The notes under the pieces: generated by a model
The model's input: the letters and a program-made list of their open reading frames with translations, nothing else
Database searches by the model: none
Told to the model about the DNA's origin: nothing
Program-made: the position numbers and the translations under genes
Shown here: in pieces, positions 4,228 through 64,000 of the stretch
Position numbering within the stretch: position 1 is the first letter of the stretch
Layout: every line of letters starts with the position of its first letter
NCBI GenBank assembly: GCA_964106645.2
Contig: OZ067039.1
DNA: 64,000 nucleotides
Direction: 5' to 3' (one strand)
Source: Podarcis pityusensis
Lineage: Eukaryota

Positions 4228-5061
4228 TAGCAAAATACGAATGAAGCTACCTCACAACGACCCTAGGAAGCAGTTTAAAGACTATAACTGGGGTGGATAG
4301 CAGATAGACACAGATGCTTGTTGGCATCCTATGAGAGTCTGCATTATTTTTTTTTTAAAAAGCTACCTCGTGTGATTGCAAAGTAAAGACTGGAAACATC
4401 TTGCTAGTGCAACCTTGGGAGAGTACAGCTCATATTCCTTCTCTCTCTCCCTGCCCCCCCCCATCACACACAGACACACATAGAGCACTCAGCCTTTCTT
4501 CCCCAAGTCAGGATGAGGGGCTCTAAAAACCCATCTCCCCCTAGTGTTGAGATGGGTAGTGAGGAAACACATCTTCTTCTCTAAGCAGTAGGCAGAGGGC
4601 TTTATTTCCCCATCTCAGTGCTGAGTGCTACAGCACTCCGATTGTAAGATAAAGCTGGAGGGGGCTGACAGGTCACTTCCTGTGAAATGCTGAGCTGGAT
4701 TTGGCTGTGGTAAATCAACCCTGCCTTGGACAAAATAATAGTAAAAATTGACTCATGGATTTAATCAGTCCCTTCCCCCCCCAAAATTATCCACCTGCTC
4801 CTCCTTCTCACATTTTATTCATTTAGACTCAACCACATTTTCAACAGGACTGCTTCTTGATAGAGACCTGACATTGTATATACAACAGAATGGCCTAAAT
4901 CAGATATAACACAAGACTATGGGAATAAGCCTGCTTGAGCCTAGGGCTTTAGAACTCTCCTGTCTTCCTCTAGTGTGGTTTAGCAGTATTATATCCAAAT
5001 GAGGCCAACATGACCTAGGGAATAAAAAGCTCCTTTGTGCCACATTCAGTGTCACACTCAC

Positions 5062-5418
5062 CAGCAAAAAGGAGGGGGTGCCACTCTCAGGAAGACCTGG
5101 CATTGGTGTGCCGGGCTCACCCATCACTCTTGAGAGTATCTCTTCCAAGATTTCCATAGGAGCACCTTTTGCCCCTTCCTCTGTAGCAGCTGCAGGACCA
5201 CCTTCTGCCCCTTCCTCTGTAGCCACTGCAGGAGCACCTTCTGCCCCTTCTTCTGTGATCGCCGCAAGAACACCTCCTATCCCTTCCTCTGTGGCTGCTG
5301 CAGGAGCACCTTCTGCCCCTTCCTCTGTAGCCACTGCAGGAGCACCTTCTGCCCCTTCCTCCATGACTGCTCCAGAAGCACCTTCTGCCCCTTCCTCCAT
5401 GGGATTATTTTTTCCTGG
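5062..5418 (-). CDS. CCDC40: CCDC40 coding exon 4, acidic tandem-repeat exon (PGKNNPMEEGAEG...TPSFLL)
   Basis: ttttgcag|CCA...TTGCTG|gtgagt; 357 nt, phase 0 to 0, inside ORF 4900..5424; acidic low-complexity N-terminus typical of CCDC40. Confidence 0.8.
5146..5397 (-). repeat. Coding minisatellite, 7 x 36 bp (EEGAEGAPAVAT-type)
   Basis: Seven consecutive 12-aa units starting EEG are visible in the translation and the DNA. Confidence 0.9.
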
Positions 5419-6167
5419 CTGCAAAAATTAGAATGAATCAACACTACCTGAACACTAGAAAATAATATGAAGATATTTCACGTTTCATCCTCTAGAAAGC
5501 ACAGAAACTTGTCTTAATTCAGCCAAATGTTAAAGGACATGCTTAACCATCCTTTAGATTTGAGTGTGATAATTTGAGAATCCAAAGTCTAAAGACAGTT
5601 AGAAAACAAGTTAGATCTGTATTTTTCTTCACTGATTTGTAGCATGGTCTTTGGCAATGACTGTGTAATGTTTATTTTCAGCAAAGGTTTAGATTTAGAT
5701 TCTTTTTTTAAAAGTGAAAACTGGAACCATGTTATAATATCTGCTGGACTGGAGACAAGAGTGCAGTAGCAACCTGTGGGGGGAGGTGGAGCAGCCCTCC
5801 AAACACTGATGCTACCTACCTGGATGGGGCTGGGGTAGGTTAGGGTGGCAGCAAAGTCAAGGCTACATGGGGATGTCAGCAGGGCCAACCCAGTGCTCCC
5901 ACCATTGTACCTGTGCAGCCCCAAATTCACAGCCACCCTGCCCCATCCAGGTAAGCTGCAAGGATGCTGCTGGCAGTGGGCGAGCTCTGCTGCTCAACCT
6001 CATCATGTAAGCTGCTACTGTAAGAGCAACAGCAAAGCACTGATAGTGCTAGAAAAGAATCAAAATAATTTGTCTACTGAATACCAGAAAAAGGAAGCAG
6101 CTTTGCTCTTCTCAAACCATTTAAATTAACTGGATTGTTTTCCTACTGAAGAATCATGAATACCTAC

Positions 6168-7525: not shown

Positions 7526-8351
7526 TTACAGCCATAGCAATGGTTGCAGTCCAAAAGTCCTGAAGAGTCAAGAGGTAAATGAATAATATCATCAATGTGA
7601 ATGACAATCTAAAGAGGAGAAAGAGTTCTGTGTGGAAGGTGATACAGCTTCCACAATATTCTTTGCTTCTTATTACTGCAAGTTCTAATGATGACTTTAG
7701 CAGTAAGTTTCAGATGCAAATGTGCAGCTTGGTTGACTAGAACAGACAACAAGATGAAAGGTGAGAGCTATGTTTCTTTTAATAATGCATGCGTGCTGAA
7801 TCAGTCTAAATAGGAAGTGGATGAATGGAGATTCTGGGTTCACAGGAGCAGGTGGTGCTAAAATAGGGAAGGGAAACTGGGAGCTCTGGATTACAATAAA
7901 TTGATGGAAATAAATAAGGATAACAACAGCCCAACATTTGAGAAGAGAAAGATACAAAATGCAGTTGTTTGAGAGGCTGGAAGTTGTGAGGAACTGAGCT
8001 TTTAGTGATTACATAAACAGTGGTGAAAATGGTCTTGAAACCCTAGGAAGAGAGCTGAGATGCAAAGTGTGAGGAAATATGAAGTAAGGGGACTACAAAG
8101 CTGATGACAACAACTAGAAAGTATCTGGGCTTGTGCATAGGGAGAGGCTCTTGGTCTTCCTTGAGCAAAGACCAGATGGGAGGACAAGTTACACAAAGTA
8201 ATGTTTGAAATGGATATCAGGCATGGGGAAATGAGGGCCATGCAGTTCACCCCAATGCATGTCAACTCAGAAATAAATTCACTGGGACTAAGTAAGCACA
8301 CATAGGATTGCAGCTGGCGGGAGGGGGGCAGAGTAGAGGTTTGGGAGATCC

Positions 8352-8427
8352 TTGTTGTTGTTGTTTAGTCGTTTAGTCATGTCTGACTCTTTGTGACCCC
8401 ATGGACCAGGCACTCCTGTCTTCCACT
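8352..8427 (-). mobile_element. Short BovB/RTE 3' end
   Basis: (TTG)n-TTTAGTCGTTTAGTC terminus as at 41828. Confidence 0.7.
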
Positions 8428-9044
8428 GGGAGATCCTAGAAGCTGGTAATATGGGGGGACTGAGGAGAAAAGTAAAGGGCATCAGCATCAGGGATGTCCC
8501 AACAAAGCGCCTTTTGGTCAATTGAGTGGAATGGGGTATTTGTTGACTGACTGTTTGCAATGGGAGGTGGAATATTGAGAAATGGAGGGTGGAGCTGGTG
8601 GGTAGGGCAAACAAGGAGTGAAGCGGCAGGGGGGGAAGCAATGGTCTGTCTTATGGGGCTCCTTTTCTTCACCCACTAACAACAGAAATTCCCATTCACA
8701 TATATGCCCATTCTCCCTTGAATTCAAGCTTTCTTGATATACGATCACAGCCCTAGATTTTAGTAGCTGAATGGGGGCGGGTTGGGGGGTGCTGTTAATG
8801 AGGGCACAGCAATGTAGATCTACAACCAGAAATTCATTTTATTTTATTTTATTTAAAAGGAAAAGTGGGGGGGGGCTGTCCCCCCCCCCCCCAAGAAGAG
8901 AGATACTAAAAGGGCTTAACTAATGCAATACACTGAAGGGCAGCAGCCTTTTCTGGGGCACCCTTTCCCCTCATCACAATGCACCCCTGTGCCTGCTCCC
9001 TCTCTAACCCAAGTGCCTTGAACCCGCTCCCTTTAAGCGCTCAC

Positions 9045-9064
9045 CGGCTGCCGCTCGGCTCCAT
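9045..9064 (-). CDS. CCDC40: CCDC40 coding exon 1 (MEPSGSR, phase-2 end)
   Basis: Minus strand reads GGAGG-ATGGAGCCGAGCGGCAGCCG|GTGAGC. Short phase-2 first exon like human MAEPGGAAGR; RFX box just upstream. Confidence 0.8.
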
Positions 9065-9072
9065 CCTCCTCC

Positions 9073-9085
9073 GTTGCTAGGCGAC
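9073..9085. promoter_or_regulatory. RFX X-box-like element at the CCDC40 start
   Basis: GTTGCTAGGCGAC resembles the X-box GTTGCCATGGCAAC and lies 8 bp from the CCDC40 ATG. RFX control of motile-cilia genes is established. Confidence 0.65.
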
Positions 9086-9556
9086 GCTAAACACATCCAG
9101 CGCTCTCTCTTCCTTTCCCTTTCTCTCTCTCTCTCCTGCCCCGCCCCGCCTTCTTCTCGGATGATACCACTTGCGGGGAGAGAGAGGGGGAAATGGAAAT
9201 ATGGTCCGAACCATTTCTGTGCTTCAGGCGGTCGTGCATGGACTAGGCTTTAAGAGACATGCATATCGAGCGACAGGAGACAAAGACAAATGAAAAAGTG
9301 TAGAGTGACACGCTGCATGAACTAAAGATAATTTATCTCTTGAAATACATCATTGGCTGAGCTTCTCTATGGTCGCAGAAACTGTGTCAATTAGGTGTAA
9401 TCTAGATTTTTTTGCAGTAAACGTTAGTGGGGGAGGAATACCAGCACAGTTTAATTTTAATCTATGGAGAACTTTGTGAGTCCACTCTTCTTTTTCCTCT
9501 CTCTATGGCCAACGAACCTGTTCGTCTGTTTCTGGTTTTTTAAAAACACCTTCAAC

Positions 9557-9625
9557 TCTCGCGATATTACTGGAAGGCTCCGCCGGCCCGTCATCCTTTT
9601 CGCGACGTGAAAATTGGCGGGAAAG
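9557..9625 (+). promoter_or_regulatory. RMI2 proximal promoter: BANP/CGCG motif and E2F sites
   Basis: TCTCGCGATA at 9557-9566 (reverse TATCGCGAGA), TTTTCGCG near 9597-9604 and TTGGCGGGAAA near 9614-9624, in CpG-rich DNA. Confidence 0.6.
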
Positions 9626-9636
9626 AAGGCAGGGCC

Positions 9637-10071
9637 ATGTCGGAAGACTCTCGCCTCGCGCAGTCGCTGCCGCCGCCGCTGCCGCCTGTGAAGGTCCTGG
9701 CCGCGCACCTGAGGCGGTGCCGCCGGGTCCCTGGCGGCCCGTGGCTGCTGGACCGGGAGGAGTACCGGCGCCCCGCTCTCGCCGTGTCGCTGGTGTGGCT
9801 TCAGGGCACGGTGCTGGCCGTGGAGGAAGGTGGCTCGACGGTGCGGCTGCGGGACGACAGCGGCCCTTTCGTGGCTCAGGGCGTGGAGAAGATCCCCAAG
9901 GGGCGGCCTTGCCTCAGCGCCGGGAAGTACGTGATGGTGATGGGCCTGGTGGTGTCTTGCAGCCCAGAGCCCACCATCCGAGCTGTGAAGATGACGGACC
10001 TTTCAGGCAACCCCCTGCACAGGGACATGTGGCAGCTGGAAGTGGAGGATTTGCATAGGCACGTTTTGTGA
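9637..10071 (+). CDS. RMI2: RecQ-mediated genome instability protein 2 (OB-fold subunit of the BLM-TOP3A-RMI complex), single exon, 144 aa
   Basis: GCC-ATG start. Motifs PPVKVLA, VWLQG, RLRDDSG, PKGRPCL and GKYVMVMG..CSPEP..AVKMTDLS.NP.H..MW.LEVEDLHR match human RMI2 along its length. No stops, frameshifts or intron. Confidence 0.95.
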   Translation: MSEDSRLAQSLPPPLPPVKVLAAHLRRCRRVPGGPWLLDREEYRRPALAVSLVWLQGTVLAVEEGGSTVRLRDDSGPFVAQGVEKIPKGRPCLSAGKYVMVMGLVVSCSPEPTIRAVKMTDLSGNPLHRDMWQLEVEDLHRHVL

Positions 10072-10655
10072 TGGGAACAGTTTGTCAAAACTGCTTCTCA
10101 AAAGAACCCTGGAGGCTGAAGAAGCACCTTTGGAATTTTTTAATTTTTTTTTATTTTGCTAAATAAGGTTCCTCTTGAACTTCCTTTAGGAGAACTTGGA
10201 TTAACCAGCGGAATTTGACCTTGATTCATTTGCTGCAGGTGTGACAGAGCAATGGCGATGGAAATGCTTGCATCCCAACCCCCTTTTTGTCGCTGATTCC
10301 CAATTAGTCAACTTGGGTCAAGTAACGTTAGCTTATCCAGTGGAGAATGCAGTTGTCACTGCTACGATAAAACATCCACAGTCAAGAATCTGGTTGCAGA
10401 ACTTTGGGCTCTTCTTTCGGCCTGCACTTTCTCTGTATTACAACGCATCTAATGTTGAGTTGCCGATTTCACTACCAGTTGCAGTCCAGACATCTGACTT
10501 CAACTGTAACTCCTTGAACTGAACTGCTGCATGAAGTCCATGCTGCTTTAAAATACTGTTTCCTCTGCCCCAGGACATATTTGGACTAATGGAGTTTCTG
10601 GACAGCTATACACATCTGGCTTCAGGGAGACACTTGCAAGATGGACGAAAGTTAC

Positions 10656-10661
10656 AATAAA
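10656..10661 (+). terminator. Candidate RMI2 polyadenylation signal
   Basis: First AATAAA seen downstream of the stop; further AATAAA near 10892 and 11571. Confidence 0.35.
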
Positions 10662-12149: not shown

Positions 12150-12750
12150 GCAGCAGAGATGCAGAGGCGGGAAACGGGAGCGGGGAAAGGGTTGCGTATA
12201 TTGTGCAGCAAAGCTTTTCCAGGATGCGAACGCAGCACGTCCCTGGAAACCGGACATATGACAAAAGTCCCCCGTCTCCACGCGATGCCCTTCTGCCCGC
12301 CTAAGTATTTGCTCTTTCTATCCTCTAAGCCCGGAGCGGATCCGGGAAGGAAGGCTCTGTGGGCAGGGATAGGCAGATAGGGTGGGAGTGCCTAAGGGTA
12401 GCCGCGCCCACCTTCCCGCAGACCCTCCTCTCGCGCGGCGAGGATTTAGGAGGCGGCAGCGGCGGTGGCCTCTGGGTGAGAATTTGCCCTGCTGGGCTTT
12501 GGGGGGCGTGGGCGAGGCTGCTCTCGCGGTCTTTGCTCGAGGTGTGTATTCCCTGGGAAATAATAGCTTACGAGAGGTGGGGAGCCGGTTCGATTTTGGG
12601 GTGGGGTCTTCATTCAGGCCCTGCGGTGGGTGAGCGGGGTGAATGGGATGTATTGCGGTGCTGGAGGAGGCGAGGTCGCGATGGGTTGATTCTGGGAAGG
12701 AGCTTCATCTCTCGGGGGTTCGCCCTTAGGGGGTGGTCTCCATCCTCTTG
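12150..12750 (+). promoter_or_regulatory. TBC1D16: CpG-rich TBC1D16 promoter with probable non-coding exon 1 ending at 12475
   Basis: Local CpG/GC enrichment; donor TCTGG|GTGAGA at 12475/12476; GGCGGGAAA at 12166. The first coding exon has an acceptor upstream of its ATG, so an upstream exon is expected. TSS not determinable. Confidence 0.65.
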
Positions 12751-13633
12751 TAGGTTACCTGCTCAGGGCGCATGTGTTTTGACACTGGTATCTATGGGGA
12801 AATTATGGTGGGAAGCTTGCACTGTAAGTGGCTGTATAGACACTAGGGGTTGACCCTGAGGTTATATGTGCAGAGAAGCCAGTTGTTATACTAGCGAGGC
12901 AGGGAACTGAAGAGAGCCTAGTATTGTGAGCAGGGATTGGCCATTGGGTATTTGAAAGCTGCACACCATAGTGCTCTAGACAAGGGAAATGTAGTCTGAA
13001 GAGGAAGGAGATGAGTGTATGTCACTGTAGAAGGCTTATGATGAATACATGGGCAACATGCTTTCCTTTGGGGTAACTCTCCTAGGTACATCTATTTATA
13101 TGTACTATGGTTCATATGTCTTTTTTGCAGTGCATTAAGCATATCCTTCTGTTATGTGACTGGCAGAGGAATGAATGTTTTTTTCTTGTTTTTTAATGTA
13201 CCTCTTCAGTCACACTAGATTACCCTGGGCTGGTATGCCAAGTTCCTTGGTTGCATTTGTATGTGGCATTTTTCTTTCACTGATTAACACTTAGAAATAA
13301 TTCATCTTGGCAGGGAAAGGGTGGGGAATGACACACAATACATGGTATTCTGGTGCAGAAAAGCTGTGAGTTAGACACGATCTCTCCCCCCCCAATCCCC
13401 CCCTTCCTGGAACACAGTGGTGAAATTGGAACCTTTACTCGCTAGTTATTTGGCAGGATGTAGCAGCAATCAGTTTCTAAGAAGACATATGTAGCATGCC
13501 TGATGAAGATCCTGCTAGGTGATCCTCATGTTTTGTGTTATGCTTATTTTAAAAGCTTGCCTTGGCAGTTGTGTCAATATGTAAATGTCATGATTGGGGT
13601 GGGGTGGGGCAGGGAGAGCCCTTATGTGGAATA

Positions 13634-13962
13634 AAAAAGATAAAGGGACCCCTGACCATTAGGTCCAGTCGTGACCGACTCTGGGGTTGCGGCGCTCATC
13701 TCGCTTTATTGGCTGAGGGAGCAGGCGTACAGCTTCCGGGTCATGTGGCGAACCAGAGCAGCGTACAGAAACGCTGTTTACCTTCCTGCCAGAGCAGTAC
13801 CTATTTATCTACTTGCACTTTGACGTGCTTTCGAACTGCTAGGTTGGCAGGAGCAGGGACCGAGCAACGGGCGCTCAACCCATCGCAGGGATTCGAACCA
13901 CCGACCTTCTGATCGGCAAGTCCTAGGCTCTGGTTTAACCCACAACGCCACCCGCATCTCAT
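13634..13962 (-). mobile_element. Sauria SINE
   Basis: Sauria SINE body; TSD ttatgtggaata at 13622 and 13963. Confidence 0.85.
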
Positions 13963-18305: not shown

Positions 18306-20855
18306 ATTGAAATTCTGCAGCTGTTTCTTCCCTTGCAACAATACAGTTACACTTTGCAAATAGCAATAGTCAATATTTGGATTTGCCCCGTCAGAAACTT
18401 GATTAGCTGAGGGCAGGGACTGAAGGCGTGTAGGGGTTAGGATCTTCCAGATACCGTCCCAGATGGGAGTGCCCATTGTTTTAACAGTTCCTGGGAAGTA
18501 AGACTAGCCGCCCCCACCAAGAAATATAGTCTCCTCCTTGGCACTGATGCTTTCCATTGTCGTGTTTTCTCTCCTTCCCTCCCTTTTTTTTTTGTTTGCC
18601 TTGCAAATATAGCAAAGTACTTTGTGAATTCAGAAACAGTGCCTACTTGAAAGAGATGAAATTGCCATGGTTGCCCCTTGTTTTAGTAATGTCTTTGGCT
18701 GCAATCCTAAACCCACTTACATGGGAATAAGCCCCATTGAATTCAGTAGCACTTATTTCTGAGTAGATATGGTTAGAATTGAATAGTTAGTTGGATTACT
18801 GTAATTCCTTATATGTGAAGCTGATTTTGGGGGGGAGGAAAAAGTCTTGGGAAACTTGAATGATCCAGCCGTAATATAGCTAGTCCTTAAACATCTACAC
18901 TAGCTTCTGGTGTATATGGGATGTAATTCAAAGTGCTGTTTTTGACCTTTAAAGTTCAAAGCACATTGGTGTCAGGATATCTAGAAGACCATTTTCTTCT
19001 GTATGAACCTACCTGTTAGCTGAGGTCTTCATATTGGGCCCTTCCCATCTTTGAAGGTCAGGCAGCTATCTATTGAGGAGCAGGGCTTTTTTGTGGTGGT
19101 GCTATATCTATGGAATATCTTCCCAAATGAGCTCTTCTTTGGTGCCTTACTTATTGGCAACAGGTTAAAAACTGTTTTATCCTCTCATTGTTATGGGCAG
19201 TCATACTTTGCCCTTTTTTGCTATGATTTTACTGGTTGCTTTCCACTGCTGCTTCTTTTGTTTAGTCTTTTGTGCATTTGCTGTTTATAAGCTACCTGGA
19301 TTTCATCGTGTTTTAAATTGTATCCCTTGGATGCCTGGAAAGCCATTTGCTGAAAATGCAGGATATAAATATTTGTGTGGTTTTTTTTAAGGAAACAAAT
19401 AACTAAAGAAGGAAGTGTATTGCATACTTGAGTTTTAGGTTCTTCATTTTCTTGCACGTGATGTTAGAGGAAGCACCGACTATGCTTTCGTTGCAGTTAC
19501 AGTAAGAACTCAAAAGTTCTTGTATGTAACCTGTTAAGTCCCCCTCCCCTCACAACCAGCAATGAAGCCAGGCATCCCAGTTCCTGCTGCATCCATCTTT
19601 TGATACGGGACCATTCTTCCGCACACTTGGCTTGTAGCAAAACTCTTAATCAAATACAGCTCCCTCTTCTGAATATGCCTTTCGATTCCATGGCAGCTCT
19701 TGGGACCTCTGCACTGCTGCAGTAATTTCTATTGTGTAATTTTAATGGTATGGCCACACTCCTTCGTCTTGAATAGAGAAATGCAAAATAAATTGGTTTG
19801 CAATATTAATTCTTTGTGTGCGATTGAATCTTCTGCTTATACCCATCTGCCCCCGTGCTTTTCACAGTCCTTTTTATCTTTTCTCTTACTGTTCTTTGTT
19901 TCTGTGCTAATTTTGTAATGGGGAAATTTCAAGAAGAGCTGTGCATATCTATATTTCCCATTTCCCATCCCCCCCCCTTCTGACTTTCCCATAGTTGGCT
20001 GGGGCATTGCATAAATCTTCAGTGCTTTGCTGCAGGGAGCATGCTGCCTTGCATGCCTTTCAAACATTACTGGGTTCTTGTAACTGTGCCAAGTCTTCAA
20101 TAAGAAATCCATCCTCCCAGCCAGACCATTCCCAAAAGCCATTCCTCTTTCTGATAAAGAAGAAACGTGCAGCCGGAGCAAGTGAGCAGCCCTGCCAACA
20201 GGATCTTCGGCTGTTTGTTCAAAAGGGATGGGCCTTAGAAGAAAGCAGCCAACTGTTTCTGCTGGCCCAGGCACTTCTTTGCTGATGAGAAGGCCTGGGG
20301 GTTATCCAGTTGCTGCCTGCCTCCAGGGGCATTGCCCATGAAAGTAGCCAGTAGCTGACTGGAAGTACGCTGTGGGCTGCAGCGCAGGTGTTCAGCAGTA
20401 GCAGCAGCAGCTGAGTGTGGGAGGAAATTAATAGGGCATGAGCAATTATTATTTTTTAAGGCAGCTGGGATTTTATTTCACCGCACATGATTGCATCACA
20501 GGTGGGGGAGAGCACTGAAGGGCCAGCTTCACAAATTGCTTGCTGTTTCCAAACATGAGGAACTGGACTCTCCAAACCTGAAATTTCTGCAGTACGTGAT
20601 TTAAAACAGGAATTGTTTTAGAGCGTGATGCCACAGCACTAATCTCCTGTCTGCACCAAGGCCTTGCATCATGTTTACTTGGGAATATGCCCCAAGAAGT
20701 GTCTGTCCTCAGAGCCTGCAATGTAGGCATGCTCTGCGCATTACTTGGAGCAGTGCGGTCGCTTCCATGTTACTCTGGGGTTCCTCCTACACAGTTCAGG
20801 TGAACTGTGTGCCACTTACATTGTTGACATGCTGTGCACCTCCCAAAAGAGAATA

Positions 20856-25767: not shown

Positions 25768-25951
25768 ATGTCTCTGGGAAGACTCCTCCGACGTGCCTCT
25801 TCGAAAGCATCTGACCTCCTGACCTTAAATGCCAGCAGCAGCAGCGGTGGCGGCTCGTCTTCCGTCTTGGATGGGGGGATTATCTACTCCAAGAACAATG
25901 TATGTGTCCATCCACCTGAGATGCTGCAAGGCATCGTGGAGCATCACCCAG
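25768..25951 (+). CDS. TBC1D16: TBC1D16 first coding exon (exon starts about 25705; MSLGRLLRRASSKASDLLTL...EHHPG)
   Basis: N-terminus matches human TBC1D16; acceptor ggcag| at 25704, donor CAG|gtgag. Confidence 0.95.
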
Positions 25952-26429: not shown

Positions 26430-27978
26430 ACAATAAAAGCTTCAATAATGAAACAGCTATTAAATGTAGTTTCGGGTTCAAAATTGGGATAAAAATGTCC
26501 ACTTGAAAGGTTTGTTGGAAGAGGAAAGTCTTCAACGGGTGCCAAAAAGATCATAGGGATAGCATGTGTCTGACAGGTAATGGAATTCCAGAAGGTGGGT
26601 GCCGTAACACTAAAGGCTCCGACATTGTATGGAATGAATCTCATGATGAGATGGTGCCTGCAGAGCATGGTGATCAGTTGCATATACACGGGGTGAGATG
26701 ATATTTTCCGTATCGTGGTCCCAGGCGGTATAAGGCTTTGCACAGCGGTATCAGCACCTTGAACTTTTATGCTGGACTTAATGTTAAGGAAAGTTCTATG
26801 GGATACACTTTGCACACAGAAGAGTCTCTCAGTAAGCATTAATTGTTCCATAAAACCTCTCCCTTGACTTCTTACCTCTTATTCTCAATCCCGTTTCAAA
26901 GTTGCTATGGAGGGTCCACTTGGTATTCCTTGTTCTTCCCTTCTCATCTTCCTAATGTTTTATTATTTCTTACGTAAAACATCAGAGTGTCTGTGGTGGT
27001 GAATTAATAGATTTTTTTTTAAAAAAAGACCCTCCTCTTAGGGCTAAACTGCACAGGATGCAAGATTGGAATTCCCAATATTTGTTAAAAGCTTAAAAAA
27101 CAAGGGGAGCTCCCCCTTTTCCACCAGAGTCTTTTTCCCAGTTAAAATTGCATCTCTTCTCATTCCTCCAAAAAGCTGCTGGTAACTATGCTGGGGCAAG
27201 AAGAAAACAGCGTAATAAAGGAGCCAATCCTTTTCTACTCCCTACCCCACACTAATAGGGATATTTTTTTTGAGGGGGGTAGTATGATTAATCAACGTTT
27301 GCCCCACCCCTGCTTTAGTAACATCCTGAAATTCAACTAGATTCCAGCCTGACATGAGCTCTGGAGGAGTAAGTGATCTTAGGAAGTTGCCTTAATACCA
27401 AGTCAGAGTCAGTGGTCTGTCCAGCTCAGTATTGTCTAGTCTGCATGGCAGCAACTCTCCAGGGTTTCAGGCAGGAGCTTTTCCCATCAGGGATAGAACC
27501 TTGGACCTTTTGTAATCAAGGCAGATAATCCATAACCGAATGGTGGCCTTTCCTATTTTGATTTTCTAGGACTGGCATCCTTATTCTTTGGGTTGCAGTT
27601 GGCCAGAAGAGTGCTCTGGTGTTCCCTCTAGCAGATGTGAAAATGACTTGGATGTGCTGATTGAGTTGGCTATGTTTTTGCCTCTAATGCCCTGTTGGAT
27701 CCCAAACCGAGCTATTGTAGATACTAGCTGGAAAGTAAAATGCAGTCAAGAACGATGCTCAGTCAACCAAACATTGCTCCAGTGGATGAAGCAATTGGGT
27801 CTGGTTAGGGGAGGAGGAAGAAGTTGGGCTTAGGAGAGAGCTGCTCAAGAGGCAAGTGAGTGATGGGAGGAGTCCCAGTGGTAGCAGGAAACTGGAGTGC
27901 TCAGCACCCTTTCAGGATACCTGCCATTCATGAAGTTGGGGCTTGGTTGTAACTCTGGGGCACTGTGTTCTTTCATAG

Positions 27979-28606
27979 GCTATTTGTGCCTGTACATGGA
28001 GAAAGATGAGCTGCTTGGAACCACGCTTATCTTGGCCTGGGTCCCAAATTCCCGAATTCAGAGGCAGGACGAGGAGGCCCTCCGCTACATTACACCAGAG
28101 AGCTCCCCGGTCCGCAAGGCCCCCCGCAAGCGTAACCGCCATACTCAGGGTTTTGGCGCCACTATGCAGGCTTCCCCCTCCGAGCAGAAGCGAGCTGTGA
28201 CCCCAAAGGATGAAGAAGACATTCTGACCGTGTCGCAGCTGGTTAGGGATGTGGCTCACGTCAGCTGCCCTTCGGAGGAAGGGGAGAAGCTGTCCCAGGG
28301 TTGCCTGGCAACCGACAGCATCCACAGCTCGGCTCAGCCTGCCCACAGTGACTCAGGTATCTTATCGACAATCAGTTCTCTGGAGGAGCACAACCGGTTG
28401 GAGGAGTCAGTGGAAGAAGGGCTGGAGACCCACCTGGAGACTGGAGAGGACGACGAGGGCTCTTTGGAGTTGTCTGCCGATGATGTCAGCAGAGACAGCA
28501 CATTTGACTCGGACTCTGATGCCTTCTCTTCTCCATTCTGCCTCTCACCCATCAGTGAAGCCCTGGTGGAGAATGTTGGCTCCATGTTCCTGGTTAATGA
28601 AAACAG
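27979..28606 (+). CDS. TBC1D16: TBC1D16 coding exon 2 (YLCLYMEKDELLGTTLILAWVPNSRIQRQDEEALRYITPESSPVRK...)
   Basis: tcatag|GC...AACAG|gtgag; 628 nt, phase 1 to 2. Confidence 0.95.
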
Positions 28607-29968
28607 GTGAGTTTATGTTCCTTTTCTCCTTTTACGGAGTAATCAAGGAGCAAGATTATCCAGTTGTAGAACAACTATTTGTCCGGTTTTTGCCCCTGCT
28701 GAGGGGCATTCACTCTACTACTCTCAGCAGTGTGATTTTATGTATGTCTACTCAGAAGTCCTACTGAGTTCAGTGTGACTTGCTGCTGCATAAGTGTGTA
28801 TAGGATTACAGTCTATTCTTTTGCGCCTCAGAGGTGAAGGCCCTGGATTCCACTAGCTGTCCAACTGTGGTGACATGCGTTGACAGTAGTCGCTACATAT
28901 GAGATCCCATTTGGTCATTGAGATGGTAGACCCTGCTTGTTTTGAGATACCCGCTGCAATGGAGGTGTAGTTGCAAGCCGTGGTATAAGTTGCTTTGATG
29001 ACCAGGGTGTTACTTAAATATGGATCTGAATGTATGTACCTGTCTTTTTTATTAGTATTCATGTCATGTAAGGAATAGCTTTTAGCTGGCTGACAACATC
29101 GCCTTACAGCAAGTTGCTTCTTTCAGTTTGGGGGCACCTCTGTTTGATGTTATCTACAGGCAGCGACCGTTTTAGCCGTGTCCAATTGACATGCAGTTGC
29201 CAACGCATTGGTCCATTTGGACCTGGAAGAAGACAGAATGGGGACTGAATGGCTGGCAGGGCAGAATGGAGGCAGGGCACATTTATATGGGCTTTGCTGA
29301 TGCACACAGGGGCTGGGAACAGAACCCTGGCACGAAATGGTCGTCACCTGTATATCCAAGACAACTTTTACCTGTCTGAAAGATGGATGAAAGAGGAGCT
29401 CAGTTGTGTGCTTCAGTACCCTGGATATAGTCTTGGAGCTTAGGCTGGCTGTGCTACTATCCATGTAATTTAGGTTGCCAAGATTATAAATTGCCAGGCT
29501 GATTTTTCTCTCTGCTTTCCTCTAGTGCTGTTGTGCAGGAGTGGCTTGCCATGTCTTCCTGTTCCTGCGCTTCAAAATCTAGATCTTATACAACTTACCA
29601 TTCTGTGACAAACTGCAAGGCTGATTTTCTAGGGTGAAGATTTACACTTTATCAATAAAATGTGACTGAAGCCACAGCTCTCCAATTTAGTACAGTGCAC
29701 ACTGTTTTGCCCGCTCATTGTGTGGGGAGGGTGCCCTCGTGTGGCCTTTCAGTTATATTGCAAATTGGCACATGAGAAAATATTTAAAATTGCAGAAGGC
29801 TGGTTTTCAAAGCTGTTAACTTTGCATGGTTCCAAGATCCCGTGTGCTTTTTGATGCTTACTTGTCAACAGGCAGCATTCCTGTTCTGTGGGCTGTGGTT
29901 TATAGAATAAAGGCAGTCAAGGATTTCTCTTTGTTTCCAGAAGATGTTGCTGTTCAAGACATGCCTAC

Positions 29969-37227: not shown

Positions 37228-37571
37228 GTAAAGGTAAAGGGACCCCTGACCATTAGGTCCAGTTGTGGCTGACTCTGGGGTTGCGGCGCTCATCTCGCTT
37301 TACTGGTCGAGGGAGCCGGCGTACAGCTTCCGGGTCATGAGGCCAGCATGACTAAGCCGCTTCTGGCGAACCAGAGCAGCGCATGCAAACACCATTTACC
37401 TTCCCGCCGGAGTGGTACCTATTTATCTACTTGCACTTTGTGCTTTCGAAAGTTGGCAGGAGCAGGGACCGAGCAACGGGAGCTTACCCCGTCGCAGGGA
37501 TTCGAACCGCCAACCTTCTGATCGGCAAGTCCTAGGCTCTGTGGTTTAACCCACAGTGCCACCTGCAACCC
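37228..37571 (-). mobile_element. Sauria SINE
   Basis: (ACCTTT)n tail; 15-bp TSD tagctgtatcgttag at 37213 and 37572. Confidence 0.9.
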
Positions 37572-41827: not shown

Positions 41828-42342
41828 TTGTTGTTGTTGTTTAGTCGTTTAGTCGTGTCCGACTCTTCGTGACCCCATGGACCAGAGCACGCCAGCCACT
41901 TCTGTCTTCCACTGCCTCCCGCAGTTTGGTCAAACTCATGCTGGTAGCTTCGAGAACACTGTCCAACCATCTCGTCCTCTGTCGTCCCCTTCTCCTTGTG
42001 CCCTCAATCTTTCCCAGCATCAGGGTCTTTTCCAGGGAGTCTTCTCTTCTCATGAGGTGGCCAAAGTATTGGAGCCTCAGCTTCATGATCTGTCCTTCCA
42101 GTGAGCACTCAGGGCTGATTTCCTTAAGAATGGATAGGTTTGTCCTTCTTGCAGTCCATGGGACTCTCAAGAGTCTCCTCCAGCACCATAATTCAAAAGC
42201 ATCAATTCTTCGGCGATCAGCCTTCTTTATGGTCCAGCTCTCACTTCCATACATCACTACTGGGAAAACCATAGCTTTTACTATACGGATCTTTGTTGGC
42301 AAGGTGATGTCTCTGCTTTTTAAGATGCTGTCTAGGTTTGTC
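41828..42342 (-). mobile_element. BovB/RTE LINE, 5'-truncated
   Basis: ORF 41841..42302 (VKAMVFPVVMYGSESWTIKKADRRRIDAFELWCWRR...) is the RTE/BovB C-terminus; (CAA)n tail. Confidence 0.93.
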
Positions 42343-48738: not shown

Positions 48739-49534
48739 CAGGGGTGGCCAACTCCCAAGAGACTGCGATCTACTCTCAGAAGTAAAAACTGGCAGTGATC
48801 TACCCCTTTTTTTGGGGGGGGGGTTCAGGTCAAAATTGTTGAGCTTTTTTTAGGGAGGAGGAAACCCCCGATTATTCAAAATACAAGCCTAAGCTCAAGG
48901 GAAAAAGGGGAACAACCACTCAGCAACAGATCACTGCGGGGAAACAAACAAACAAACAGCCTCCCTAAGTAAACTCCGTCTTCCATTATGCAGATCGTGC
49001 AGCAATGGAGGCCGGGACAAGGGGGCAGGGCTGGAATCTATTTTACCAACACTAAGGAAAGGGATTGCCAAAGAATTGATGCTTTTGAATTATGGTGATG
49101 GAGGAGACTCTTGAGAGTCCCATGGACTGCAAGAAGAACAAACATCCATTCTTAAGGAAATCAGCCCTGAGTGCTCACTGGAAGGACAGATCGTGAAGCT
49201 GAGGCTCCAATACTTTGGCCACCTCATGAGAAGAGAAGACTCCCTGGAAAAGACCCTGATGTTGGGAAAGATTGAGGGCACAAGGAGAAGGGGACGACAG
49301 AGGACGAGATGGTTGGACAGTGTTCTCGAAGCTACCAGCATGAGTTTGACCAAACTGCGGGAGGCAGTGGAAGACAGAAGTGCTTGGCGTGCTCTGGTCC
49401 ATGGGGTCACGAAGAGTCGGACACGACTAAACAACAACAACAACAAAGGAAAGGGATCCAGCAATCAACTGTGATCTACCAAAACCTCATGGGGATCTAC
49501 CAGTAGATCGTGATCGACCTGTTGGACATCCCTG
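48739..49534. mobile_element. hAT non-autonomous element hosting a BovB insertion
   Basis: TSD ctctagat at both sides; CAGGGGTGGCCAAC...GTTGGACATCCCTG TIRs. Confidence 0.85.
49066..49445 (+). mobile_element. BovB/RTE LINE 3' fragment
   Basis: KLRLQYFGHLMRREDSLEKTLMLGKIEG; (CAA)n tail; TSD aaggaaagggat. Confidence 0.92.
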
Positions 49535-63353: not shown

Positions 63354-63751
63354 GTGTGTGTGAGATGCCTCTTTCTCCCCACCCTCCCTTCCTCAGCCAT
63401 TCTTCTTTTAAATCTTCCCTCCCTTGGCAATTGAAACAATGAGGGGGGAATTAACTATCCCCAGAAAATGAACCTTCACAGTAGGTCCAATGTCACATTT
63501 TGGGTGGGACGTATACAGAAGAGAGGCAACTGCTCTGTCCTCCCCAACTGCCCCAGATCTCCTTTATTTTGACCCTTACCTGAAAGTACTCCCAGGTCCA
63601 TTGGCATAGCTGTCAACATTTCCCTTTTTTAAAGGGAAATTCCCTTATTCCGAATAGGATTCCTTGCAAGAAAAGGGAAAAGTTGACAGCTATGTCCATT
63701 GGCAGCAGTGGGTGGTTTGGGAGTGCACTCATGTTGTAATGTGGCGCCTAG

Positions 63752-63886
63752 GCTCTCCCTGACACCGGAGGAGCAGAAGGCATTCTGGCGGAATGTGCAG
63801 TTCACGGTCGACAAAGATGTGGTGAGGACGGACCGCAGTAACCAGTTTTTCCGAGGAGAGAACAACCCCAACGTGGAAACAATGAG
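63752..63886 (+). CDS. TBC1D16: TBC1D16 coding exon 7 (LSLTPEEQKAFWRNVQFTVDKDVVRTDRSNQFFRG...); gene continues right of the window
   Basis: cctag|G...ATGAG|gtgat; 135 nt; contains the DxxRT arginine-finger motif of TBC domains. Confidence 0.95.
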
Positions 63887-64000
63887 GTGATTGTTGTAAC
63901 CCATTAGTGCCCCCCAAAATACACTGAGAACCTTGCACCCACTTGGAAAGCCCAGATGCATCTGTGTTTTGGACACCCAACCTCATACGCTTCCAGGTAA

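What the first reader, a model, noticed from the sequence alone, without database searches (positions are those of the whole stretch)
9637..10071. Intact intronless RMI2 between CCDC40 and TBC1D16: probable retro-relocated genome-stability gene
Seen: a full-length RMI2 ORF with a GCC-ATG start and no intron; CLSAGKYVMV is contiguous. Recalled knowledge: human RMI2 has two exons on 16p13, while CCDC40 and TBC1D16 are direct head-to-head neighbours on 17q25. Inference: RMI2 reached this site as a retrocopy in a squamate ancestor and is functional (no lesions, CpG-rich, own E2F sites). It may have replaced the parent gene. No poly(A) remnant or TSD is visible, which suggests an old event.
Basis: partly seen in the sequence, partly recalled or inferred. 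Interest (0 to 1): 0.8.

Follow-up and report, generated by a model that had tools for sequence, protein, structure and literature searches.

The report
Intronless RMI2 retrogene in a lizard
This lizard's apparently only copy of the DNA-repair gene RMI2 is an old, still-constrained processed (intron-free) copy lying between CCDC40 and TBC1D16, a site shared by non-gecko lizards and snakes, while geckos carry a sister intron-free copy elsewhere.

Summary
Observation confirmed. Window 9637-10071 (+) is a complete 144-codon RMI2 gene (Pfam PF16100, E 1.6e-40; human RMI2 structures, E about 1e-42). It has no intron. Shark, turtle and bird RMI2 each have one phase-1 intron inside CLSA|GKYVMV, exactly where the lizard ORF is continuous.

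The neighbours are CCDC40 (minus strand, start codon about 570 bp upstream, head to head) and TBC1D16 (plus strand, CpG island at 12.3-12.7 kb). Both were verified.

The same order holds in Zootoca, a skink, Anolis, a rattlesnake and one unidentified squamate contig. Two geckos differ: their intronless RMI2 lies between a torsin gene and SH2D3C. The two kinds of locus share only a transcript-sized block: the coding sequence, about 450-500 nt of 3'UTR, and perhaps 30 nt of leader.

The gene is under purifying selection (ML omega 0.20; 2dlnL 192 against neutrality). No squamate in the protein search shows a second RMI2.

Verdict: a functional, probably orphan retrogene, predating the radiation of non-gekkotan squamates. 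I found no paper reporting it.

The parts
9637..10071 (+). RMI2 coding sequence, 144 codons plus stop, single exon
   Evidence: ORF. Pfam PF16100 at E 1.6e-40, full model. Solved human RMI2 at E about 1e-42. Continuous where shark, turtle and bird have a phase-1 intron. Omega 0.20 across squamates.
9607..9636 (+). Short leader, possibly the retroposed 5'UTR; holds the E2F-like motif TTGGCGGGAAA at 9614-9624
   Evidence: 21-24 of about 33 positions match the gecko loci at the same offset from the ATG. This is at the top of upstream control segments, but those reach 23, so it is suggestive only. Motif position. Conserved in Zootoca, Tiliqua and Crotalus.
9516..9606 (+). Promoter-proximal block conserved among non-gecko squamates only; holds ACTCTCGCGATAT at 9555-9567
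   Evidence: Window-Tiliqua local alignment spans -121..-1 (z 12); window-Anolis spans -88..-15 (z 19). No similarity to geckos, turtle, bird or shark. Alignment; motif. The promoter role is inferred.
10072..10530 (+). 3'UTR block homologous to the 3'UTR of the gecko RMI2 retrogene at a different genomic site
   Evidence: Against Eublepharis, Smith-Waterman z is 39 with 74% identity over 381 aligned positions (10092-10529). Against Heteronotia, z is 25-30. Beyond about 10600, z is 0.2-0.3. The multiple alignment A3 suggests conservation to about 10565.
10656..10661 (+). First canonical AATAAA after the stop codon; candidate present-day poly(A) signal
   Evidence: Pattern scan. Zootoca has one at the matching offset of +589. 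Use of this signal is not shown.
9001..10000 (.). CpG island spanning CCDC40 exon 1, the 570-bp spacer and most of the RMI2 coding sequence
   Evidence: CpG observed/expected is 0.74-1.03 in 200-bp windows, against 0-0.26 just to its left.
9044..9064 (-). CCDC40 first coding exon (start codon at 9064-9062, followed by a GT donor), head to head with RMI2
   Evidence: Read from the sequence. The Zootoca gene call of a CCDC39-family protein of 1184 residues ends at the matching place. The region is conserved in Crotalus and in contig L011.
1602..1952 (-). Open frame holding a CCDC40 coiled-coil exon
   Evidence: Matches solved CCDC40 chains at E 2.9e-17 and 1.7e-14, residues about 300-387.
12331..12700 (+). 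Second CpG island; probable TBC1D16 promoter and non-coding first exon
   Evidence: CpG observed/expected 0.6-0.9. Conserved downstream of RMI2 in Anolis, Crotalus, Tiliqua and contig L011. The role is inferred from position.
25768..25950 (+). TBC1D16 first coding exon (approximate 3' end)
   Evidence: Open frame with the start methionine. 88% identical to the start of a Gekko kuhli partial TBC1D16 model.
27984..28607 (+). TBC1D16 large second coding exon (within this open frame)
   Evidence: Named homologues (TBC1 domain family member 16) in birds at 72-78% identity, E down to 5e-90.
63687..63887 (+). TBC (RabGAP) domain exon of TBC1D16
   Evidence: Weak matches to the GAP domains of TBC1D15 and TBC1D17, E 4e-4 to 4e-3.

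Best explanation
The ORF is the working RMI2 gene of this lacertid lizard. RMI2 is the small OB-fold subunit that pairs with RMI1 in the BLM-TOP3A-RMI1-RMI2 complex. The gene arose by retroposition of a spliced RMI2 mRNA consisting of a short leader, the coding sequence and about 0.5 kb of 3'UTR. The copy landed about 0.5 kb from the CCDC40 start, in the opposite orientation, between the CCDC40 and TBC1D16 5' ends. This happened before non-gekkotan squamates radiated. The gene has been kept by purifying selection ever since. It is probably transcribed from the CpG island it shares with CCDC40, helped by a conserved E2F-like site just upstream of its ATG. The intron-bearing parent gene appears to have been lost, making this an orphan retrogene.

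Shown: gene identity, absence of the intron, synteny, the transcript-sized block shared with the gecko locus, and selection.

Inferred: promoter use, loss of the parent, and protein function.
For: - Identity: Pfam and solved-structure matches. The lysine that corresponds to human K121 is kept in every squamate sequence. Mutating K121 breaks the FANCM-BLM complex link (PMC5167996).
- Ancestral intron: present at the same phase-1 position in shark, turtle and bird, absent here.
- Ancestral locus: the bird and turtle genes have no CCDC39-family neighbour within 10 kb.
- Shared site: the order CCDC40 / RMI2 / TBC1D16 island recurs in Zootoca, Tiliqua, Anolis, Crotalus and contig L011.
- Transcript-sized block: the gecko loci lie between a torsin gene and SH2D3C. 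They share with the window only the coding sequence plus 450-500 nt of 3' flank (z 25-39). There is no similarity further out on either side.
- Selection: pairwise dN/dS is 0.10-0.45, with upper bootstrap bounds below 0.7 for the deep pairs. ML omega is 0.20, lnL -2180.9 against -2276.8 with omega fixed at 1.
- Copy number: one RMI2 protein per squamate species among the 120 best hits, and intact ORFs in well over 30 named squamate species.
Against: - No poly(A) remnant or target-site duplication remains, so the classical scars of retroposition are missing.
- The squamate 3'UTR shows no detectable similarity to turtle, bird or shark 3' flanks (nhmmer). Its derivation from the parental mRNA is therefore inferred, not shown.
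- Parent loss rests on annotated proteins only; no genome-wide search of this genome was possible.
- The closest pair (window and Zootoca) is too similar to give a useful dN/dS (0.49, interval 0.14-2.2).
Confidence: 0.85

Rival explanations
1. The gene is an extra retrocopy, and an intron-bearing parent RMI2 still exists and works elsewhere in this genome. It would then be a retrogene, but not an orphan.
For: No genome-wide nucleotide search of this genome could be run. Parent loss is inferred from annotated proteins only.
Against: None of the squamate species in the 120 best hits has a second RMI2 cluster, although a parent-type protein should score like turtle RMI2 (E about 1e-56) and be listed. 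The lacertid cluster holds one locus per species. Omega of 0.20 over roughly 170-200 million years (age from memory) fits an indispensable single copy.
Confidence: 0.08
2. The intron was lost in place, for example by recombination with a cDNA, and the gene was then moved by DNA-level rearrangement. No retroposed insertion was involved.
For: There is only one coding intron to lose, and no poly(A) tail or target-site duplication is left to prove retroposition.
Against: Two different squamate sites each hold the gene between gene pairs that are, from memory, direct neighbours in human: CCDC40-TBC1D16, and a torsin gene-SH2D3C. The sequence shared by the two sites stops at transcript-like boundaries, with z falling from 39 to 0.3 past the 3'UTR and no clear similarity more than about 35 nt upstream of the ATG. 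A DNA-level move would be expected to carry promoter or flanking sequence.
Confidence: 0.05
3. An intronless RMI2 beside CCDC40 is the ancestral reptile or amniote state, and birds and turtles moved the gene and gained an intron.
For: None found.
Against: The same phase-1 intron is present in a shark, a turtle and a bird, so the intron predates amniotes. Geckos do not have RMI2 at this site.
Confidence: 0.01

Closest known systems
Vertebrate RMI2 (human C16orf75; solved structures 3MXN, 3NBH, 4DAY, 9DHK)
   Same: Same family and length. About 55% identity to human over 91% of the protein. The full Pfam domain is present, and the lysine equivalent to human K121 is kept.
   Different: The coding region is a single exon, whereas shark, turtle and bird have two coding exons. 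The genomic neighbourhood is different.
Orphan retrogenes: retrocopies that outlived and replaced their parental gene (concept of PMC3548309; abstract seen)
   Same: Intronless copy at a new site, under purifying selection, with no second copy seen in the lineage.
   Different: Found in squamates rather than in the human-chicken comparison. The same gene sits at two non-orthologous retrogene sites in sister lineages (geckos against other squamates). Parent loss is not yet shown at genome level.
Retrocopies that become expressed by landing beside a CpG-island, bidirectional promoter (general knowledge; compare PMC4772013, abstract seen)
   Same: RMI2 lies head to head with CCDC40, 570 bp between start codons, inside one CpG island. 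The gecko copy likewise lies head to head with a torsin gene, 1.2 kb away in Eublepharis.
   Different: Promoter sharing is inferred from position only. A conserved E2F-like site lies in the leader that may have come with the mRNA.

Membership tests
RMI2 protein family | Match to Pfam PF16100 above the curated cut-off, over the whole domain | tested here: met
   138.4 bits against a cut-off of 29.4; model positions 1-132 of 132.
RMI2 protein family | End-to-end similarity to experimentally solved RMI2 | tested here: met
   E about 1e-42 to human RMI2 chains; query residues 13-143 align with chain residues 18-146.
RMI2 protein family | Conserved lysine (human K121) needed for the link between FANCM and the BLM complex | tested here: met
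   Window K118 aligns with human K121. The lysine is present in all squamate sequences examined. Its role is described in PMC5167996.
RMI2 protein family | Physical association with RMI1, TOP3A and BLM | not testable with these tools
   Needs co-immunoprecipitation or complementation.
Processed retrogene | Lacks the intron(s) of the parental gene | tested here: met
   The phase-1 intron between CLSA and GKYVMV is present in shark, turtle and bird. The sequence is continuous in the window and in seven other squamate loci.
Processed retrogene | Lies at a site other than the parental locus | tested here: met
   The window gene lies between CCDC40 and TBC1D16. Bird RMI2 lies beside a vitellogenin-like gene carrying Pfam LOC400499, and turtle and bird RMI2 have no CCDC39-family neighbour.
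Processed retrogene | Homology confined to the transcript (UTRs and coding sequence, no promoter or flanks) | tested here: met
   Between the two squamate sites, the coding sequence plus about 450-500 nt of 3' flank are similar (z 25-39), and nothing beyond. Against the parental-type genes of turtle, bird and shark, only the coding sequence is detectably similar.
Processed retrogene | Poly(A) tract at the 3' end | tested here: not met
   There is no A-rich tract after the conserved 3'UTR. This is expected to have decayed at this age.
Processed retrogene | Target-site duplication | tested here: inconclusive
   None is visible, and the insertion boundaries are known only to within tens of bases.
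Orphan retrogene | Parental gene absent from the same genome | tested here: inconclusive
   Only one RMI2 protein per squamate species appears in the database. No nucleotide search of the genome was possible.
Orphan retrogene | Purifying selection on the retrocopy | tested here: met
   Omega 0.20; 2dlnL = 192 against omega = 1; pairwise dN/dS 0.10-0.45.
Orphan retrogene | Transcription | not testable with these tools

The most novel reading that the evidence does not exclude
RMI2, a core genome-stability gene, was replaced by a retrogene twice within squamates. This happened either as two independent replacements (one in geckos, one in all other squamates) or as a retrogene that retroposed again and superseded its first copy. 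In either case the mobile unit carried its own E2F-like leader and a strongly conserved 3'UTR. Both surviving copies settled head to head beside another gene's CpG-island promoter.
Probability: 0.35. Interest if true: 0.7.

Novelty: new member of a known kind. Interest (0 to 1): 0.5.

Why it matters
RMI2 stabilises the BLM-TOP3A-RMI1 complex, which dissolves recombination intermediates. If the reading is right, this essential function is encoded in a whole order of about 11,000 species by a processed copy running on a borrowed promoter, and the original gene is gone. That would be a clean, very old case of gene replacement by retroposition outside mammals.

Pipelines that need a parental gene in the same genome (such as the one described in the VGP preprint) cannot detect such cases. 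The existence of two alternative sites, in geckos and in other squamates, offers a natural experiment on how a retrocopy acquires regulation. The 3'UTR is conserved across two unrelated genomic sites, which points to post-transcriptional control of RMI2 that could be tested.

I found no paper that reports this.

Tried and rejected
- Tuatara: its RMI2 protein (P0019) is not on record with a contig, so its intron state and site remain unknown.
- Empty-site test in a gecko: I fetched the 5' end of a partial Gekko kuhli TBC1D16 model. The 10-kb flank has no CpG island, no CCDC40 exon and no RMI2 trace, and does not reach the promoter region. It is uninformative.
- Parental 3'UTR: an nhmmer profile of the squamate 3'UTR found nothing significant in the turtle, bird or shark loci.
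- 5' leader: the roughly 30-nt similarity between gecko and non-gecko loci is only suggestive, because control segments reach similar match counts.
- TBC1D16 naming: the protein atlas search on the large exon gave meaningless hits, and Pfam found nothing on single exons. The word search then settled the name.
- NCBIfam gave nothing for RMI2 or for the torsin exon.
- Earlier scan notes hold nothing on RMI2 or LITAF in this genome.
- Ancestral-state rival: rejected by the shared intron in shark, turtle and bird.
- Handling of spliced genes: CCDC40 and TBC1D16 were checked exon by exon, by reference. The only joining was an in-script check that exon 1 plus exon 2 of the shark, turtle and bird loci translate to the database protein, done to place the intron.
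- Human material: no human contig was fetched or compared, and the human proteins in the hit list were not used.

Full report
THE OBSERVATION

Window 9637-10071 (+) is an ATG-started ORF of 144 codons plus stop, in a GCC-ATG context. It matches the Pfam RMI2 family over the entire model (PF16100, positions 1-132 of 132, E 1.6e-40, 138 bits against a curated cut-off of 29.4). It aligns end to end with solved human RMI2 chains at E about 1e-42. The nearest database protein is Zootoca vivipara RMI2 at 95% identity. The window's own protein sits in a 90% cluster with Podarcis and Lacerta RMI2, so the window comes from a lacertid lizard. The ORF and its upstream 600 bp form a CpG island: GC is 0.67-0.72 and CpG observed/expected is 0.74-1.03 over the ORF.

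IS IT REALLY INTRONLESS RELATIVE TO THE ANCESTRAL GENE?

I fetched RMI2 loci from a shark (Stegostoma, L010), a turtle (Carettochelys, L002) and a bird (Apus, L003). In all three, the annotated protein is reproduced only by splicing out one GT-AG intron. The introns are 9822, 1406 and 1025 nt long. Each is in phase 1 and falls exactly between CLSA and GKYVMV. The window ORF is continuous across that point (residues 92-101). So are the RMI2 genes of Zootoca (L004), Tiliqua (L008), Anolis (L005), Crotalus (L006, L007), two geckos (L001, L009) and an unidentified squamate contig (L011). The Tiliqua gene model adds a short alternative N-terminus from an exon 10 kb upstream, but the homologous coding sequence has its own ATG and is one exon. 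The intron is therefore ancestral to jawed vertebrates and is missing in squamates.

NEIGHBOURS

To the left, on the minus strand, open frames at 170-397 and 1602-1952 hold coiled-coil exons. The second matches solved CCDC40 chains at E 2.9e-17. The first coding exon of CCDC40 (start codon at 9064-9062, then a GT donor) lies about 570 bp from the RMI2 ATG, head to head. The Zootoca gene call ends at the matching position.

To the right, on the plus strand, there is a second CpG island at about 12.3-12.7 kb. It is followed by the first coding exon of TBC1D16 at about 25768 and a large exon within 27885-28607. That large exon hits proteins named TBC1 domain family member 16 at 72-78% identity. 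A later exon weakly matches the GAP domains of TBC1D15 and TBC1D17.

HOW WIDELY IS THE SITE SHARED?

Zootoca, Anolis, Crotalus and Tiliqua all have RMI2 next to a CCDC39-family gene of about 1100-1180 residues on the opposite strand. DNA comparison shows three blocks conserved in the same order: CCDC40 exon 1, RMI2, and the 12.3-12.7 kb island. This order holds in Crotalus, Tiliqua and contig L011. Anolis keeps the RMI2 and island blocks in that order, but its CCDC40 exon 1 gave no DNA match. Bird and turtle RMI2 have no such neighbour within 10 kb. The bird gene lies beside a large vitellogenin-like gene carrying the Pfam family named LOC400499. A quail model fuses RMI2 to CLEC16A. From memory, both fit the human 16p13 neighbourhood.

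THE GECKO TWIST

In Heteronotia (L001) and Eublepharis (L009), RMI2 is also a single exon, but it lies between a torsin-family gene and an SH2-RasGEF gene. One exon of the latter matches solved SH2D3C at E 4e-33, against 1e-7 for BCAR3. From memory, TOR2A and SH2D3C are direct neighbours in human 9q34, just as CCDC40 and TBC1D16 are at 17q25. Each squamate RMI2 therefore looks like an insertion into an otherwise conserved gene pair. In Eublepharis the torsin start codon is 1.2 kb from the RMI2 ATG, head to head, in GC-rich sequence. This is the same kind of arrangement as RMI2 and CCDC40 in the window.

WHAT THE TWO KINDS OF LOCUS SHARE

Local alignment of the 800 nt after the stop codon gives z = 38.5 (window against Eublepharis) and z = 29.5 (window against Heteronotia), measured against shuffled sequence. 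Both exceed the scores for the window against its orthologous loci in Tiliqua (16) and Crotalus (13). On tighter windows, the Eublepharis match covers window 10092-10529 at 74% identity over 381 aligned positions, with z = 39. The next 1.6 kb gives z of 0.2-0.3, and the 1 kb upstream of position -40 gives z of 1.4-3.3. The multiple alignment shows the same conserved 3'UTR blocks in lacertids, geckos, skink and snake, out to about window 10565.

Upstream of the ATG, about 30 nt (from 9607) resemble the gecko leader, with 21-24 matches in about 33 positions. Control segments occasionally reach 23 matches, so this is only suggestive.

The shared unit is therefore about 0.9-1.0 kb: a short leader, the coding sequence and the 3'UTR. 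That is the size and shape of a processed mRNA. No poly(A) tract or target-site duplication survives. A profile of the squamate 3'UTR finds nothing in the turtle, bird or shark loci, so the parental origin of the UTR is inferred rather than shown.

SELECTION

Pairwise Nei-Gojobori dN/dS between squamate lineages is 0.10-0.45. Bootstrap upper bounds are below 0.7 for all deep pairs. The window-Zootoca pair is too close to be informative. A codon model on eight squamate sequences (134 codons) gives omega 0.20 and kappa 3.8, with lnL -2180.9. Fixing omega at 1 gives at best -2276.8, so 2dlnL = 192.

The lysine that aligns with human K121 is kept in every squamate sequence. The K121A mutation uncouples FANCM from the BLM complex (PMC5167996). 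Intact RMI2 ORFs are annotated in well over 30 named squamate species, including about 18 snakes.

In a protein tree the squamates form one clade (support 90/73). Geckos (100/99) are sister to the rest, as in the species tree. Tuatara falls, weakly, with turtles and birds.

PARENT LOSS

Among the 120 best hits (E down to 1e-37), each squamate species appears once. A surviving parent-type protein should score like turtle RMI2 and would have been listed. This supports replacement of the parent, but it is annotation-level evidence only. I had no tool to search this genome at nucleotide level. The scan's earlier notes hold nothing on RMI2 or its ancestral neighbours.

REGULATION (INFERRED)

Non-gecko squamates share a block from about -121 to -1. 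It contains ACTCTCGCGATAT at 9555-9567 and the E2F-like TTGGCGGGAAA at 9614-9624. Each occurs once in the window, which is no more than chance would give, so the argument rests on conservation. The E2F-like site lies within the leader that may have come with the mRNA; in geckos the matching position has drifted from the consensus.

The most likely mechanism is transcription from the CpG island shared with CCDC40, with cell-cycle input through the E2F-like site. The conserved 3'UTR points to post-transcriptional control.

HISTORY

The evidence requires two insertions. It cannot tell apart three histories:
- independent retropositions in geckos and in other squamates, each followed by loss of the parent;
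- one early retrogene that retroposed again and was then lost at its first site in one lineage;
- two early copies followed by reciprocal loss.

Tuatara would be decisive, but its protein is not linked to a contig. My attempt at an empty-site test in Gekko kuhli did not reach the promoter region.

COMPARISON WITH WHAT IS KNOWN, AND VERDICT

The protein is an ordinary RMI2. The gene is a new example of an orphan retrogene, a known kind (PMC3548309, abstract). Its unusual feature is two non-orthologous sites in sister lineages. I found no paper linking RMI2 with retrogenes or lizards. Retrocopy pipelines that require a parental gene in the same genome would miss it.

This site dates to the ancestor of non-gekkotan squamates at the least, not demonstrably to the squamate ancestor.

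No human contig was fetched or compared.

Noticed in passing
L001:10001-10417 and L009:10001-10420: Gecko RMI2 is also intronless, but it lies between a torsin gene and SH2D3C, head to head with the torsin gene (1.2 kb between start codons in Eublepharis). About 330 nt upstream of the ATG is conserved between the two geckos (z 34), and just before the leader there is a pyrimidine tract ending in AG that looks like a splice acceptor.
   Followed up: partly
window 5158-5397 (within the minus-strand open frame 4903-5427): There is a 36-nt tandem repeat, 6.7 copies at 81% match. In the minus-strand frame it encodes a repeated acidic 12-residue unit (TEEGAEGAP-like). By position and strand it is probably an expanded repeat in the N-terminal part of CCDC40.
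   Followed up: partly
window 49115-49471 (+), 8291-8650 (-), 41845-42342 (+): These open frames look, from memory, like the C-terminal end of RTE/BovB-type LINE ORFs and associated repeats. They lie inside TBC1D16 and CCDC40 introns. No tool was used to identify them.
   Followed up: no
window 13553-13909 and 37273-37518 (+): Two copies of a dispersed element share the same translated motif. The first also matches two places in the Anolis locus L005. It is probably a squamate SINE.
   Followed up: no
L008:10001-20393: The Tiliqua RMI2 gene model borrows a 13-residue N-terminus from an exon 10 kb upstream. The retrogene has its own in-frame ATG at 19986. This is either an annotation artefact or a recruited 5' exon.
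   Followed up: partly
L005:10454-11800: In Anolis the conserved 3'UTR block is not found directly after the stop codon. A weak match (nhmmer E 0.023) lies 1.3 kb downstream, which suggests insertions or turnover in the Anolis 3'UTR. Anolis and Sceloporus also have the longest protein branches.
   Followed up: no
protein P0019 (Sphenodon): In the protein tree, tuatara RMI2 groups weakly (80/60) with turtles and birds rather than with squamates, and its N-terminus resembles the turtle one. This would fit a parental-type gene in tuatara, but the support is weak.
   Followed up: partly
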